From contig NC_088859.1 of the NCBI RefSeq assembly GCF_963853765.1, positions 50,344,001 through 50,408,000 of the forward strand: a DNA stretch of 64,000 nucleotides, given 5' to 3'. The position numbers and the translations under genes were made by a program. The stretch comes from Magallana gigas (lineage: Eukaryota). Below the pieces are notes generated by a model. That model was not told the origin of the DNA, did no database searches, and saw nothing but the letters and a program-made list of their open reading frames with translations. Positions within the stretch are counted from its first letter, which is position 1. Each line of letters opens with the position of its first letter. Shown in pieces: positions 25,904-57,223 of this stretch.

Positions 25904-28900
25904 ATGGCAATGTGCACGTCTAAGATCGCAGTGTATGTTTTTTTGGGCTGCATCGCTGCAAGTTCCCTACGCGTCTTTGTAGAAGCAGCCTCGACAGATA
26001 GCAAACAGAAGACAACAGGTGGGTACAATTTCAATCCCAGCCAATCAAATCATTAAAACTTTATAATGGGGGTACACCTTTAGTATCATTTTTAAGTAAT
26101 ACACATTTTGGAGAAAAAAAAGAAGATGGGGGAATAAGATAGCGCAAATGCCCATTTGGTTCAGTCGTTAAATACCATTTTGAATTTATTTTTTCCCAAT
26201 TATATCCATTCAAATATATCATAATTCAAGCTTGCAAGAGCACAATTTCTAACTATATTCAGTTTTATATCTTTTTTTTTATAGATAAAATATATCTAAC
26301 AAATGATACGAAAAAAATATTGTCTTAAAGTTTGGTGGCATCGAACCCATAACATAAAAACCCTAGATATATAAGGTTAGTTTATGTCAGGTGCTCTTAC
26401 CACTGAGCCATTTCAGACACGAGAAAAAAAAGGCCGTTAAATGCCTTGTCTGACTTTGGCCACAAATTTACGGACTTGTATTATTTTTTCAAAATGTTCA
26501 ATTTTTGGATTCAAAATGACATTTTTGATGTATAGTGGGTCATCTCTCCACGTTTTTGTTGATTGAAATCGGTTTGTTTTCAATTCGACTTTATTTAGAC
26601 TATGAGTAAAATATGGAGTACCGACCCACTCTATGAAAAAAAATACCTCGAAGTTTCTAAAAAATGACATCATTTGCAGGTTTTGATACGTATGCATCTG
26701 CATGTTTGAGTCAAAATATTCCAAGTGTTGAACATATTTATAGGTAACAAATCAATGATGATAAATATACATCGTTTTAAATGATTTTAAAAAAAATCAG
26801 ATTTATTGATATTTAAATTTTTCAGTAGCTTGTCCGACCGTATATGGGCATTTTACACGCCTTATCCACCCATCTTCTTTGTAATTATTTTGAAAAACAA
26901 CGTTATGGTTAACGTCAATTTCATAATCGTAGACAGAACAAACTGAAATAGATTGAGACCATGAATTTTAGTTTTAATATTTGATATGCTCATTAAAAAA
27001 TAATCTGGGCAACACATTGACTGATAACGTAATCTTTGGCATATATCTTTAACGTCATCTTTTAAAACGCGGAACCACAATATTTAGCGTCAAGTTTGTT
27101 CTTTCTATTTGTGACGTCGCTGTTACACAAAGGACATATATTATGTAAATTTTAAAGTCTTTTGGGAAACATGATATAAAAATTCCTCGTGTTGAATTCA
27201 TGAATTTCAGGATGCAAAAACATGCCTACTCTTTCGTCAAACGCACCAAAATTTGAAGGATAACTAAAACAGCGCCTCAGTAAATCCAAAAATAATTAAG
27301 AAATGTACATGCAATATAGAACTCAAGAAGTCCACACTTTTCTTTTCAATTTTGAAACGAATGGACACAACGATTCCATGGATTATAGACAGTAAAAAAA
27401 GTACCTCGGACACTGGAGAGGAAATTTCAACAACTGTTTTCACTGTTTCCACAACTGTGATTTCCACGACGGCCTCAACCAAAGCAACTGATGGGACTTA
27501 TACAACAATTTCAACAGACACAATGGACGTTGGTTCAGCGACTGATTCCATTGGTACCGGCGATGAACTCACTCTACAGCAATCCTCGTTCACCGGGGAC
27601 GAAAATTACTTGAGTGGAGCTGGTGTAGAGGGCGCCTCTTTACAGACCACCACACTGGGAAGCGTAGAGGGGACCACAACAGATTACGGTAGATATAAGC
27701 GTATAGTTACATTAGCAAATATGCTTCCTTAGATATGAACTTATAGAACAGCAAAACGTCACAATGATTATAACACGCAGTTATTTGAAGGTTGCAATAT
27801 TGCATGCGTAAAAAATATTGTTATATTTAAGGAATGGATTCAATATTTATTTGTTTTATACGATATAAAATGGTTTGGAGGAGTTTACGCTTTATAAACT
27901 TTTTATACTCTTCATTGTACATGTAGATAAAAACGGACATTTGACCTTTAAAACGACGTAGAATTATACAAAATTCAAACGTAACGTCAGGCGTATTGAT
28001 TTTTGACGTTAGTCTCACTATGACGTGGGCAACATTCTTTATACGATATAAAATAATTTTTTAGCCGATCAGAAAGCGCGTTACAACCAGAATTAAATTA
28101 TTAATGATTAACTACATGTATTTGCCATTCCAAATCGTAAATATAAGTAATGAACAGCCATATAAAAAAGTTTACTGAGATATATTAACATCTACCAAGT
28201 ATTATTCCCTCTATTTCTTACGAAATCTTTAAGTTAATTCATAGCTCTATAGAAAAGGTCAGGCTGAAATCTACACGCCCTGTTTATCGATTCTACAGTG
28301 GCTGAAACTAAGAAGAAATTGACAGGTCTGAAATTGACACGCCCTGTTTATCGATTGGTCGAAACCTACAGCGACCTACAAAATATCACGGACTGCACGA
28401 AATAACCATGATGATGTCAGACTCAAAGTCTTACAGGAGACGATTTGGCTGTTTCTTTAAGCTAACATACTTATGTACATAACAGTTATTTGGTGAATTT
28501 TAATGACTTCATAATCAATTTATTAATTATACTCTGTCTCGAGTTTCTGCTTCCACCACTTTTCGCTTGATATTTCGATAATCATAAATACCTTTGTGCC
28601 CAAACTACGTTCATCCATTAATATGAAAAATTTCCAGATTATCTGTTTTGAAACGCCTCCTCTACCTCTTCAGGTTTCAATACACATCCCAAAATAGAAA
28701 TTGTACGGGGATTTTTCATTGCATCAGCCATTAATAAGCCCGGATGATAACGTTTAAAAATTGCGCGAGGTGTCCCGAGTACTTCCGAATGAAGAAAAGA
28801 TGTAAACATTTCCCATTATAAATCTCCATAAGAATTTTTTTTCGTTCCTGTAAACTTTAATGAGTGAAAAGGGATAATTTGTCAATAAAGATATCTTGGA

Positions 28901-29460
28901 TATTTTCCATTTCATTGATTTCAACTGTACTTCTTTCACAGGTATGTGTATTTTGATTAAAAATTATCAAAAATTGATGGAAGCAATAACTTGGGACAGA
29001 CTATAGTTACAAGACAGATGTTTATATAAACAATAAAATGCTTTTTCTGATGATTCATACAGGTTATGAAGGCAACGATCATTGCAGGAAAGATTTACAT
29101 AATCCGCTAACGCGGGCTATATATTTTTTCTGCAATGTCGCTAGCTTCATATCCCGAATGAATCACCAAAGAAAGCATTTTAGTGAACTTGGTTTGTACG
29201 TGATCAAATCTTCACAGGATTTGATCACGTGAGCATTAAAATTCATATCCCAGTGAGCCTTTTAAGTTGGTATTTATTTCCTAATTTCATAAACTAATGG
29301 TGTCTGTACGAAAGAAAGAATTGGATACCTTCATTTTTGGACATACTACCGCAATAAAGCATGGGTTTAAAACCTGGTTAGAGATACAAAACATGCAATA
29401 ATTCAATGAGACTTGTATTTTACAGGCCATTTTGGTGATGTTGGTGCCTATGGTGGTTGA
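25904..29460 (+). CDS. Secreted Ser/Thr-rich acidic orphan protein, paralogue 1 (4 exons, ~192 aa)
   Basis: Exons 25904-26018 (MAMCTSKIAVYVFLGCIAASSLRVFVEA, signal-like), 27389-27688 (DSKKSTSD, Thr-rich), 29063-29191, 29426-29460 (GHFGDVGAYGG*); all phase-1 GT-AG introns; sum 579 nt; tataaaa about 60 bp upstream. Confidence 0.7.
26330..26420 (-). other. tRNA-derived sequence (SINE head or tRNA relic)
   Basis: Minus strand has A-box-like tggctcagtggt and B-box-like gggttcgatgcc; no intact cloverleaf seen. Confidence 0.4.
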
Positions 29461-54735: not shown

Positions 54736-56346
54736 ATTTTTGTGCAGTACTTTTGAAGTTTCTCCTTCACTACTGTAAGAATTTTAGTAAGAAGTAAAGA
54801 GAGAGATTTGGTAGAACATTTACTGGAACCTGCTATATATCTATGAATAAGATACTAGTAGTACAAATGCCAATTTGGTTAGGTCATTAAACACAATTCT
54901 TTTTATTTTCAGATATGTATGAAATTTTCACACATTCAAACCGACAACAATTTCAATTGATTGTATCAGTTCATATCTTTAAATTTCTTAAATTTGATTT
55001 TATTGACTTTTTTCAAATATTCTTTTGATTTTTTGACAAGTCAACGGGTTTTCTATTCTAACACCGTTGAAAGCGGTGTAATGTATAGAAAACTCATGTT
55101 TTCCAAAAAGTTACTTAAGACTCAAAAGTTGTTCATAATTTTGACAGATGGAAGGATAGAATATCTTTTATATAACAATTTAGAGGAGAGAGTTAGATCC
55201 TCTGAATTCCATTACTGTAAAATGAAATTATTTGAAAATAAAAATCGAATTTAAATCAACGGTTCCTTGCTTTTTATTTATTAAATCGTTAGATCCATAA
55301 GTGTAATTTTCTTTTGTTGTTTAATTTGTGCATAAATCCCAGTTAGAATCTCTCAAAAGTTATTTTGAATATAAATCAGCAGATTCCCAAATTTGTCATA
55401 ACAAACTTGTTAAATTTGTTATGTCGTTATAAGTATGGTCATTTGTGTCAAAGAGTGATCCTTGTCTGGCAATCAACGCCATAGTACTATACTGCAAGAT
55501 GGTCTTTCATTGGTTTTAGGGTATTTACCAATCAATTTATATTAAACCAATCATTGAACCATTGAATCATTAAACCAGTGATGTGACTATCACCTAGGAA
55601 CATTGAGCTCAAACAGGTCATCTTAACGAAGAAGAGAGAGACAGTATTCAATTGACAAAAGTTCAAGAAATAAACACCAAAGTGATAAATGTCGTGTATA
55701 AGCAAACAAATCTCAATATTCTGTGAACAATAAGCATGTTAATATGAATAGGAAGTTGGTTTACATCTAATTACTTGACTGGCTATAATAACATGTTATT
55801 ATCAACAATACAACTCATGCCGTTATACTAGCTCGACGTGTGTTGGGCAGATGCTTGACTTAAACATCGTGATAGCTTGTGATAATTGTAACATGGCTCC
55901 TATAACACTGTGTTTAAATTTACCCTTTTCCCTCTCTGATACTGCATTAAAAATAACATATCTCGCCATTAAAAATAACATATCTCGCCTACAGTCAGGC
56001 TAAAAAGAATCAGTTGCCACCAGAAGTTCATCTCCATTCAAATCCCGTTGTTAGACGTAATGGGTAGGACATGTGTTATAGCGAGAACTGAAAGATAATT
56101 TAACAGTGTATATAACCATACAATCAGTGGGTACAATGTGTGTTGTTGGAACCATTCATATCCTTAGCAATGCTGTTACATTGATTCGATAAACAATTAG
56201 CAGTGTTCTTCTTAAAGCCTGTACAATTCGTTTGTCAAAAGAAAATGTATGAAACTGGATCTACAAACCGTTAGCAATTGTTAGGATATATAAACCATGG
56301 TGTCAAACGAAATCGAAATCAAATCTGATGACCCGACTACAGAACA

Positions 56347-57223
56347 ATGTGGGCATCGAAAACTGTGTTGTATAGTTTCACGGTCGTATTTGCTGTGGTT
56401 TACCTGTGTACGTGTGTTGTAGCAGCCCCAACTCAGGATAAACAAAAAACAACAAGGGAGTAAAATTTAAGAATCTTAATTTCTGTAAGTGTAATTCGAA
56501 AAAAAAAATCATTGCAGATAACAAAATCCAATTTCACTTAAAAAAAAAGTTGATAAATGCATTTGAAAGTAAGTGAATATAAATATGTACACATATTTTG
56601 TTAAGATTTGAGACTAATAAATGCTAAAATAATCATACTATGAAGTCCTTTCGTTTTGTTTTCTCATATATAGCGAAAAAATAACAGAACTAAAAACTTG
56701 CCAAATATTCCATAAACACATCCTTTAAATTAGCCAAATGTACATGTAGCTGCGCATTTTTTTATCGCCTCGCTAAAATGCTTCTTTTTTCATGCAAGAT
56801 TCAAATTATGTCAAACATAGAAGACCTATGGAAGAAAAATTAAATTTGGTAAGATTCAATGAATCAAAGGTAACTAAAACACACTTGTTAAAGAAAATGT
56901 TTCTGAAGGTTTGATCAAGGTCAAATAAACTCAACGAGAGAACGAAAAATATTATTTATATATTATGTTATAAAAAAGGCGATATCTGGTCGTTTTTTTC
57001 GCTCTCAATATTGAAATATTGATAAAAATTGATGGATTTGATACACGGGATATTTTAATTACAGACACTACGAAAAGTAGTTCTGACATTACTACAATTG
57101 ACGCAGTGGCTGGAAATTCCTTCTTTGAGTCCACTGGCTCAGGGTATGAGCTAACTAGCCAGAACCCCGCCTACATTGAGGGCGAAACGTCTGTGGTTGA
57201 TGAATCCAACCAAGGCACACCAG
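56347..57223 (+). pseudogene. Orphan protein paralogue 3, probable pseudogene (exon 1 donor lost; last exon not in window)
   Basis: Paralogue 2 cagcag|gtgagt is caacaa|gggagt here; read-through hits TAA at 56461-56463; exon 2 57065-57223 is intact. Confidence 0.7.

What the first reader, a model, noticed from the sequence alone, without database searches (positions are those of the whole stretch)
25904..57223. Three-member tandem family of small secreted Ser/Thr/acidic orphan proteins, mostly invisible in the ORF track
All three share a signal-peptide exon ending K-Q-K-T-(T/A) and a Thr/Ser/Asp-rich exon starting D(S/T)(K/T)KS(T/S)SD with a STGSGYELT/SIGTGDELT motif. Paralogues 1 and 2 also have a tiny last exon GHF...G* followed by gaagaa(g)aaatc, and only phase-1 introns. 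No known domain is recognisable. Inference: O-glycosylated mucus, shell-matrix or adhesive proteins. They sit directly downstream of the secreted astacin on the same strand, so they could be co-expressed or even be its substrates (speculative).
Basis: partly seen in the sequence, partly recalled or inferred. Interest (0 to 1): 0.7.

Follow-up and report, generated by a model that had tools for sequence, protein, structure and literature searches.

The report
Oyster-only family of small secreted proteins
Three neighbouring Pacific-oyster genes (two intact, one decaying) encode small, acidic, Ser/Thr-rich secreted proteins that occur only in oysters; they are real and spliced as predicted, already listed in databases as "uncharacterized", and have no known function.

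Summary
The window is Magallana (Crassostrea) gigas, contig C7. It holds three tandem paralogues on the + strand. G1 is 149 aa (CDS 25904-26018, 27389-27688, 29426-29460). G2 is 98 aa (38892-39000, 39558-39716, 46076-46104). G3 has exon 1 at 56347-56455 and exon 2 at 57065-57223.

- **Splicing:** all introns are GT..AG and phase 1. Spliced RNA contigs confirm G1 exon 1-2 and both G2 junctions. The G1 exon 2-3 junction is present in RefSeq XP_034311328.1.
- **Database status:** the genes are already public as "uncharacterized protein" (LOC117684204, K1R2B7, A0A8W8MQW8, A0A8W8MR01).
- **Homology:** there is no Pfam match. Among 1.84 billion representative proteins, the only relatives are diverged copies in other oyster read sets. 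The genome holds exactly three exon-2 copies, so this is an oyster-restricted orphan family.
- **G3 in this assembly:** its exon-1 donor is GG instead of GT, and its only candidate last exon, outside the window, has lost its stop. It is probably decaying. A fourth unit, also outside the window, is a relic.
- **Products:** an N-terminal signal sequence, then an acidic (pI about 4), Ser/Thr/Gly-rich, Cys-free chain of 7-12 kDa that is predicted disordered.

The proposed roles (O-glycosylated mucus, shell or adhesive protein; a link to the astacin) remain untested. This is an ordinary kind of mollusc orphan gene.

The parts
25846..25853 (+). G1 TATA box (TATAAAAA), followed by the conserved CATGGTGT, 58 nt upstream of the ATG
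   Evidence: the TATA box plus CATGGTGT aligns with G2, G3 and the other-species contig L023.
25904..26018 (+). G1 exon 1 CDS. It encodes the signal sequence MAMCTSKIAVYVFLGCIAASSLRVFVEAASTDSKQKTT and ends in phase 1 with donor GTGGGT.
   Evidence: Spliced contig 9 of run X2 joins 25927-26016/18 to 27387/9-27660.
27389..27688 (+). G1 exon 2 (300 nt, phase 1 at both ends). It is Thr/Ser/Asp-rich and carries DSKKSTSD and SIGTGDELT.
   Evidence: In five M. gigas haplotypes it has 1.7% segregating sites and no indels, against about 3.5% plus indels in the flanking introns.
29426..29460 (+). G1 last exon CDS (G)HFGDVGAYGG*, followed by GAAGAAATC
   Evidence: The junction to exon 2 is present in RefSeq XP_034311328.1 (P0022). 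No spliced read was seen for it.
38832..38839 (+). G2 TATA box (TATATAAA), followed by CATGGTGT
   Evidence: The promoter plus 5'UTR is 57/57 identical to G3.
38892..39000 (+). G2 exon 1 CDS MWASKTVLYSFTVVFAVVYLCTCVVAPPTQGKQKTA, phase 1, donor GTGAGT
   Evidence: The junction 39000|39558 is in RNA contigs L009 and L018, and in UniProt K1R2B7 and A0A8W8MQW8.
39558..39716 (+). G2 exon 2 (159 nt) DTKKSSSD...STGSGYELT...NQGTP, with the weak donor GTCGGT
   Evidence: Contig L009 joins 39716 to 46076.
39700..39939 (+). 22-bp minisatellite (unit TAAACAAGGCACGATAGGTCGG). Its first unit overlaps the end of exon 2 and supplies the exon-2 donor.
   Evidence: The same array follows exon 2 in G3 and in the other-species contigs L010, L023 and L027.
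40057..45958 (.). 5.9-kb non-autonomous DNA transposon in G2 intron 2. It has 28-bp terminal inverted repeats and a TTAA target duplication (piggyBac-like), and it is absent from another M. gigas haplotype.
   Evidence: Contig L028 runs from 40056 straight to about 45960 with a single TTAA.
46076..46104 (+). G2 last exon CDS (G)HFNFFGSG*, with AATAAA at 46129-46134
   Evidence: The exon is spliced in L009 (P0005) and in A0A8W8MQW8 (P0027).
56347..56455 (+). G3 exon 1 (MWASKTVLYSFTVVFAVVYLCTCVVAAPTQDKQKTT). The canonical donor is mutated: caacaa|GGgagt, against cagcag|GTgagt in G2.
   Evidence: G1, G2 and L023 all keep GT at this position.
57065..57223 (+). G3 exon 2, 97.5% identical to G2 exon 2 (4 nonsynonymous and 0 synonymous differences)
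57224..57899 (+). The 22-bp minisatellite after G3 exon 2 (about 27 units)

Best explanation
This is a tandem, oyster-restricted (taxonomically restricted) gene family.

**Gene anatomy (shown).** Each gene has a TATA promoter, a very short mRNA and three coding exons separated by phase-1 introns. Exon 1 encodes an N-terminal signal sequence. Exon 2 encodes an acidic, Ser/Thr/Gly-rich, Cys-free segment with a conserved S-x-G-x-G-x-E-L-T-x-Q motif. A tiny last exon adds an aromatic, Gly-terminated tail (GHF...G*).

**How it works (inferred).** The precursor enters the secretory pathway and the signal is removed. A 7-12 kDa disordered acidic polypeptide is released. It is probably modified on its many Ser/Thr residues (O-glycans and/or phosphate). 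It acts outside the cell as a soluble or matrix-associated component such as mucus, extrapallial or shell matrix.

**History.** The family grew by local duplication. G1 is old and diverged, with a Thr-rich insert. G2 and G3 are recent, or homogenised by gene conversion. G3 and a fourth unit are now decaying.

I put about 0.85 on "real secreted orphan family" and about 0.35 on the specific extracellular-matrix or mucus role.
For: **Genes are transcribed and spliced as modelled.**
- X2 contig 9 joins G1 exon 1 to exon 2.
- Logan RNA contig L009 (P0005, 98 aa) contains G2 exon 1, exon 2 and the last exon, joined at 39000|39558 and 39716|46076.
- UniProt A0A8W8MQW8 is the same three-exon protein. 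RefSeq XP_034311328.1 joins G1 exon 2 to GHFGDVGAYGG.
- All splice sites are GT..AG and phase 1, and the CDSs translate cleanly.

**Paralogy.**

**Constraint.**
- Between G2 and G3, the exons and promoter are 95-100% identical with no gaps. Intron 1 is 89% identical with 68 gap columns.
- Other-species copies (L010, L023) keep the ATG, the KQKT plus GT donor, the exon-2 reading frame, and (L010) a last exon GMFNLIGASG*.
- dN/dS for exon 2 is 0.36-0.59 against the intact copies and about 0.9-1.0 against the start-less copy L027.

**Orphan status.**
- No Pfam family matches.
- Nothing convincing appears in the ESM Atlas.
- A profile search of 1.84 billion representatives finds only the family itself and oyster-like genomic ORFs.
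- Exactly three exon-2 copies exist in the 564-Mb genome.

**Secreted and disordered.**
- A hydrophobic N-terminal segment is followed by small residues.
- The mature chain has pI 4.05 (G1) and 4.35 (G2), Ser+Thr of 37% and 28%, Gly of 13%, and no Cys.
- AlphaFold2 gives one helix (residues 4-25) and no structure for the rest, with pLDDT 41-56.
Against: - No tissue, stage or protein-level evidence was obtained.
- Expression looks low or narrow. Only two Logan RNA contigs give the G2 protein, and none gives the full G1 protein. Raw poly(A) reads sampled from X21 did not touch the G1 exons.
- The signal peptide is judged by hydropathy and AlphaFold2 only, without SignalP. G2's 21-residue hydrophobic run could be a signal anchor.
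- Pro is scarce and there are no PTS tandem repeats, so a mucin-type character is uncertain. Asp+Glu at 12-14% is far below the classic acidic shell proteins.
- dN/dS of 0.4-0.6 and the decay of G3 and L027 show weak constraint.
- One contig (X1) and two database models read through the exon-2 donor, so the GHF tail is not always added.
Confidence: 0.6

Rival explanations
1. The genes are young and barely functional, or close to neutral. They would be transcribed and spliced at low level, with no important role for the peptides, and would be on their way to loss.
For: - G3 has lost its canonical donor, and its candidate last exon has lost its stop.
- A fourth unit is a relic.
- L027 in another species lacks the ATG.
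- dN/dS is 0.36-0.59, and about 1 for L027.
- There are very few assembled transcripts.
- The lower diversity in G1 exon 2 rests on only five haplotypes.
Against: - Intact reading frames, splice sites, promoter motif and terminal Gly tail are kept between G1 and G2, which share only about 30% identity.
- They are also kept in diverged copies from other oyster data.
- Exons have no indels while introns have many.
Confidence: 0.15
2. The genes encode precursors of C-terminally amidated secreted peptides (signalling or antimicrobial). The terminal Gly would be converted to an amide, and the basic pair at the start of exon 2 would be a processing site.
For: - Every intact copy ends in Gly directly before the stop..AYGG*..FGSG*..FGAG* and ..GASG*.
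- KK or RK sits at the exon 1/2 boundary in G1, G2 and L010.
- A signal sequence is present.
Against: - The basic pair is not conserved: TK in G3, KT in L023 and L027.
- No internal dibasic sites release a short peptide.
- The conserved core lies in the long acidic part, not in the tail.
- Read-through isoforms lack the tail altogether.
Confidence: 0.1
3. The genes are functionally coupled to the upstream astacin, either co-regulated with it or serving as its substrates.
For: Only position supports this: same strand, with G1 starting about 2.4 kb after the last astacin-gene ORF noted at 23442.
Against: - G1 has its own TATA box, ATG and signal exon, and no contig links it to upstream exons.
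- G2 and G3 lie 15 and 33 kb further on, separated by retroelement and transposon DNA.
- No co-expression data were obtained.
Confidence: 0.05

Closest known systems
Public M. gigas models: XP_034311328.1 (LOC117684204), K1R2B7_MAGGI, A0A8W8MQW8_MAGGI and A0A8W8MR01_MAGGI, all named 'uncharacterized protein'
   Same: They are these very genes: G1, G2, G2 and a G3-type copy.
   Different: - The RefSeq G1 model starts at an ATG inside intron 1 (MNTTIPWII) and lacks the signal exon that X2 contig 9 shows spliced on.
- K1R2B7 and A0A8W8MR01 read through the exon-2 donor and end ..GTPGR*.
- A0A8W8MR01 uses a cryptic in-frame donor inside exon 1.
- None of the models carries a family name or a function.
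Lineage-restricted, low-complexity secreted proteins of mollusc mantle and shell secretomes (for example the abstract of PMC5400390, Aguilera et al. 2017, seen)
   Same: These proteins are small, carry a signal peptide, are compositionally biased, evolve fast, are restricted to a narrow clade and lie in a tandem cluster.
   Different: No mantle expression or shell-proteome detection has been shown for these genes. A supplement search of one oyster shell-proteome paper found no match.
Mucin-like proteins and classic acidic shell-matrix proteins (mucoperlin, Aspein, Asprich, folian-type phosphoproteins; named from my own knowledge)
   Same: They are secreted, acidic, Ser/Thr-rich and probably disordered and post-translationally modified.
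   Different: There are no Pro/Thr/Ser tandem repeats. Pro counts are 0 in mature G1 and 2-4 in mature G2. Asp+Glu is only 12-14% and there are no poly-Asp runs. No sequence similarity was found.
Vertebrate SCPP gene cluster (caseins, enamel and saliva proteins; named from my own knowledge)
   Same: It is a tandem cluster of small, disordered, fast-evolving secreted proteins with the signal peptide on its own exon.
   Different: There is no homology. SCPP introns are phase 0, whereas here all are phase 1. The resemblance is an analogy only.

Membership tests
Taxonomically restricted (orphan) secreted-protein gene family | No detectable homologue outside a narrow clade | tested here: met
   Pfam gives nothing. 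Word-indexed searches find only M. gigas or oyster-like sequences. A profile search of 1.84 billion representatives finds only the family's own members plus oyster-like ORFs, and the remaining hits are repeat or composition noise. Caveat: other bivalve genomes could not be searched directly.
Taxonomically restricted (orphan) secreted-protein gene family | Real gene: transcribed and spliced, with the reading frame conserved between copies | tested here: met
   Spliced contigs, clean CDSs, and frame and splice sites kept in L010 and L023.
Taxonomically restricted (orphan) secreted-protein gene family | N-terminal signal peptide | tested here: inconclusive
   A hydropathy profile with small residues before the polar part and an AlphaFold2 helix at residues 4-25 fit a signal peptide. 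No dedicated predictor was available, and G2's 21-residue hydrophobic run could be a signal anchor.
Mucins / mucin-like O-glycoproteins | Pro/Thr/Ser-rich domain, usually made of tandem repeats | tested here: not met
   Ser+Thr is 28-37%, but Pro counts are 0-4 and no coding tandem repeat was reported. By eye, G1 has only one short duplicated Thr-rich heptad.
Mucins / mucin-like O-glycoproteins | Dense O-glycosylation demonstrated | not testable with these tools
   This needs glycoproteomics or lectin blots.
Acidic shell-matrix proteins (Aspein/Asprich-type) | Very high Asp content or poly-Asp blocks | tested here: not met
   Asp+Glu is 12-14% of the mature chain and there are no Asp runs.
Acidic shell-matrix proteins (Aspein/Asprich-type) | Presence in the shell proteome or mantle-specific expression | not testable with these tools
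   Accession searches of the paper library and of one shell-proteome supplement found nothing. This is not evidence of absence.
Amidated peptide precursors | C-terminal Gly as amide donor | tested here: met
   All intact copies end in Gly before the stop.
Amidated peptide precursors | Conserved mono- or dibasic processing sites that release the peptide | tested here: not met
   KK or RK occurs only in G1, G2 and L010. G3 has TK, and L023 and L027 have KT. There are no other dibasic sites.

The most novel reading that the evidence does not exclude
Two readings are not excluded.

1. The family may make C-terminally amidated, acidic secreted polypeptides with a specific binding or signalling role, carried by the invariant ELT-x-Q core.
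2. The weak exon-2 donor lies in the first unit of a length-variable 22-bp minisatellite. That array, conserved in position across oyster species, might set the balance between the spliced GHF...G-tailed form and the read-through ..GTPGR* form.
Probability: 0.1. Interest if true: 0.5.

Novelty: new member of a known kind. Interest (0 to 1): 0.3.

Why it matters
The work gives a corrected, evidence-backed annotation of a small oyster-specific secreted-protein family.

- The true G1 protein has a signal exon that the RefSeq model lacks.
- G3 is probably a decaying copy.
- The family is confined to one locus.

If the proteins turn out to be components of mucus, shell matrix or an immune secretion, they would be handy lineage-specific markers. 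They would also be an example of how new secreted genes arise, duplicate and die in bivalves. On present evidence this is one of many such orphans in mollusc genomes and carries no functional surprise.

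Tried and rejected
1. **The ~1,000-nt Logan contigs (P0008 and others, 147 contigs) as G1 mRNAs.** Rejected. They are colinear with 26853-27852, the unique DNA between two high-copy repeats, so they are genomic.
2. **The upstream pieces of L009 and L018 (37481-38140, 38536-38633, 38814-) as G2 5'UTR exons.** Rejected. Their borders are CT..AC, meaning minus-strand introns. An unstranded assembly merged an antisense transcript with the G2 mRNA.
3. **P0033 (a 1,689-aa bacterial repeat protein, 21 matched stretches) and P0035-P0037 as relatives.** Rejected as composition or repeat matches.
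4. **The 120-130-aa minus-strand ORFs across the minisatellites.** They are by-products of a 22-bp repeat that lacks stops in one frame, and they have no Pfam match.
5. **Runs X5 and X21.** X5 behaves like DNA: its contig crosses the exon-1 donor and starts upstream of the TATA box. The X21 sample had no reads on the G1 exons. Neither counts as evidence of expression.
6. **Shares of 0.10-0.14 in "RNA" runs.** These mostly reflect repeat-derived words, so they are not expression evidence.
7. **Paper searches.** Searches by accession and run id, and one shell-proteome supplement, returned nothing.
8. **AlphaFold2 (single sequence).** It gave no fold to search with.
9. **The L018 junction 39748|58317.** It is not GT..AG on either strand and stays unexplained. 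It may be a collapsed minisatellite or a chimera between G2 and G3.

Full report
**Where we are.** The window has no N and about 30-43% GC. It is G000:C7:50344001-50408000 of a 564-Mb, 29-contig assembly. Run labels ("oyster metagenome") and UniRef and NCBI names of identical proteins (Magallana / Crassostrea gigas) identify the Pacific oyster.

**The observation.**
- Translating the + strand places KQKT-ending hydrophobic exons at 25904-26018, 38892-39000 and 56347-55.
- Thr/Ser/Asp-rich exons lie at 27389-27688, 39558-39716 and 57065-57223.
- GHF...G* mini-exons lie at 29426-29460 and 46076-46104.
- Joining them gives clean CDSs of 450 nt (149 aa) and 297 nt (98 aa). Every intron is GT..AG and phase 1.
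- The motif TTTACAGGCCATTTT...GAAGAAATC occurs only at the two last exons, against 0 expected.
- G2 and G3 lie in a duplicated block that is 87% identical (38376-39939 against 55809-57440).
- G1 is far more diverged, at about 30% amino-acid identity in exon 2, but it is colinear with G2. Exon 1 gives E = 1e-4 and exon 2 gives E = 0.006. It also shares the TATA box plus CATGGTGT promoter block.

**Transcription and splicing.**
Contig 9 of run X2 (364 nt) joins 25927-26016/18 to 27387/9-27660, which is the predicted exon 1-2 junction.
- A contig of X1 (27423-27798) runs through the exon-2 donor.
- No read set covered the last exon as spliced. X5 looks like DNA, and the 1% sample of X21 missed the exons.
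- The high depth at 26032-26895 and 27760-29199 comes from repeats in the introns.
- The protein databases filled the gap. P0005, from Logan RNA contig L009 (984 nt), is exactly signal exon + exon 2 + GHFNFFGSG, and it maps with junctions 39000|39558 and 39716|46076.
- UniProt A0A8W8MQW8 is the same model. K1R2B7 and Logan P0028 (contig L018) are exon 1 + exon 2 reading through to ..GTPGR*.
- RefSeq XP_034311328.1 joins G1 exon 2 to GHFGDVGAYGG, but it starts at an intronic ATG.
- A read-through isoform without the tail probably exists for both genes.

**Pitfalls met.**
- The many ~1-kb contigs carrying MNTTIPWII...GRYKRIVTLANMLP are genomic.
- The extra 5' pieces of L009 and L018 have CT..AC borders. 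They belong to a spliced minus-strand transcript that overlaps the G2 promoter and exon 1, and they were merged by unstranded assembly.

**State of G3 and family size.**
- In this assembly the G3 exon-1 donor reads caacaa|GGgagt. G1, G2 and the other-species copy L023 all have GT there.
- The next GT, four bases on, would shift the frame onto an early stop.
- UniProt A0A8W8MR01 (G3-type) avoids the site. It uses a cryptic in-frame donor at 56407|56408 and ends in the read-through GR*.
- The only G3 last-exon candidate lies outside the window, at about G000:C7:50410010. It has lost its stop through a small indel when compared with L010's GMFNLIGASG*.
- Just beyond it lies a fourth unit with intron-1-like DNA and the minisatellite but no exon 1 or exon 2.
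- DNA, protein and profile searches of the whole genome find exactly three exon-2 copies, all at this locus.

**Relatives elsewhere.**
- Pfam gives nothing, and the ESM Atlas gives nothing above chance level.
- The profile of the mature parts (A3) was run against 1.84 billion representatives. It finds the family itself plus P0032, P0034 and the P0007 group.
- These are genomic ORFs on contigs L010, L023-L026 and L027, from other run series. They are 72-84% identical in DNA to G2 and G3, and the reference genome holds no closer copy. They are therefore very probably from other oyster species, though the species could not be determined here.
- They keep the exon-1 ATG, KQKT and the GT donor (L023). 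They also keep the exon-2 frame, the minisatellite directly after exon 2, and (L010) a last exon GMFNLIGASG* plus GAAGAAATC.
- L027 lacks the ATG.
- The remaining hits (P0033 and others) are repeat or composition artefacts.

**Selection.**
- Between G2 and G3, promoter plus 5'UTR is 57/57 identical. Exon 1 is 95.4% identical and exon 2 is 97.5% identical without gaps. Intron 1 is 89.3% identical with 68 gap columns.
- Exon-2 dN/dS is 0.59 against L010, 0.36 against L023 and 0.93 against L027.
- Among five M. gigas haplotypes, G1 exon 2 has 1.7% segregating sites and no indels. The flanks have about 3.5% plus indels. The sample is small.
- Taken together, constraint is real but weak, as is usual for fast-evolving secreted orphans.

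**The proteins.**
- There is an N-terminal hydrophobic run: 15 residues in G1 and 21 in G2.
- The mature part has pI 4.05 (G1) and 4.35 (G2), Ser+Thr of 37% and 28%, Gly of about 13%, Asp+Glu of 12-14%, no Cys and few or no Pro.
- AlphaFold2 (single sequence) gives only a helix at residues 4-25. The rest has pLDDT 41-56 and no secondary structure.
- Conserved positions are K-S-x-S-D at the start, TT..TD, S-x-G-x-G-x-ELT-x-Q, EG, and the Gly-ending aromatic tail.

**Mechanism.**
- Shown: the gene structure, the splicing, the paralogy, restriction to oysters and the composition.
- Inferred: secretion, disorder, Ser/Thr modification and an extracellular role.
- Neither the mucin label nor the acidic-shell-protein label passes its defining composition test.
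- An amidated-peptide reading fits the terminal Gly but not the processing sites.
- A link to the astacin rests on position alone.

**Verdict.** This is a real family of an ordinary kind. It is already present in databases as uncharacterized models, and its function is still open.

Noticed in passing
window 40057-45958 (TTAA at 40053-40056 and 45959-45962): A 5.9-kb insertion sits in G2 intron 2. It has 28-bp terminal inverted repeats (GAGGCAGTCTACCATAGAACCATGCAAA) and a TTAA target duplication, so it is piggyBac-like. It has no long ORF. It is absent from another M. gigas haplotype (contig L028, SRR327447), where intron 2 is only about 0.5 kb.
   Followed up: partly
window 39700-39939 and 57207-57899; also L010, L023 and L027: A 22-bp minisatellite (TAAACAAGGCACGATAGGTCGG) starts inside the end of exon 2, so its first unit encodes ..QGTPG and supplies the weak GTCGGT donor. 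Its position is conserved in the diverged oyster copies, and its length differs strongly between G2 (about 7 units) and G3 (about 27 units). Each unit repeats a decoy donor.
   Followed up: partly
window 37481-38140, 38536-38633, 38814 onward (minus strand): A spliced minus-strand transcript (introns read CT..AC on the + strand, with two alternative borders) overlaps the G2 promoter and exon 1. It is seen merged with G2 mRNA in Logan contigs L009 and L018. Its short ORFs have no Pfam family.
   Followed up: partly
L018:1351-1414 = window 58317-58380: RNA contig L018 jumps from 32 nt past exon 2 (39748 in G2, 57254 in G3) to 58317 without GT..AG on either strand. This could be a collapsed minisatellite, a G2/G3 chimera or a structural variant. 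It is unexplained.
   Followed up: no
window 33440-35341 (+): A non-LTR retrotransposon fragment with a reverse-transcriptase domain (PF00078, E = 3e-34) lies between G1 and G2.
   Followed up: partly
window 26032-26895 and 27760-29199: Both G1 introns are filled with high-copy repeats. These repeats are very abundant in the RNA-labelled runs, with word depths in the thousands to tens of thousands, and reads on them show many diverged copies.
   Followed up: no
G000:C7:50410010-50411408 (just beyond the window end): A degenerate last-exon copy (GTFNLIRASAYFK..., stop lost) is followed by a fourth, exon-less unit of the array made of intron-1-like DNA plus the minisatellite.
   Followed up: partly
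window 27430-27480: The Thr-rich insert of G1 (STTVFTV/STTVIST) looks like a short internal duplication (ACAACTGT..TTC.C twice), seen by eye only. G2 and G3 lack this 29-residue segment.
   Followed up: no
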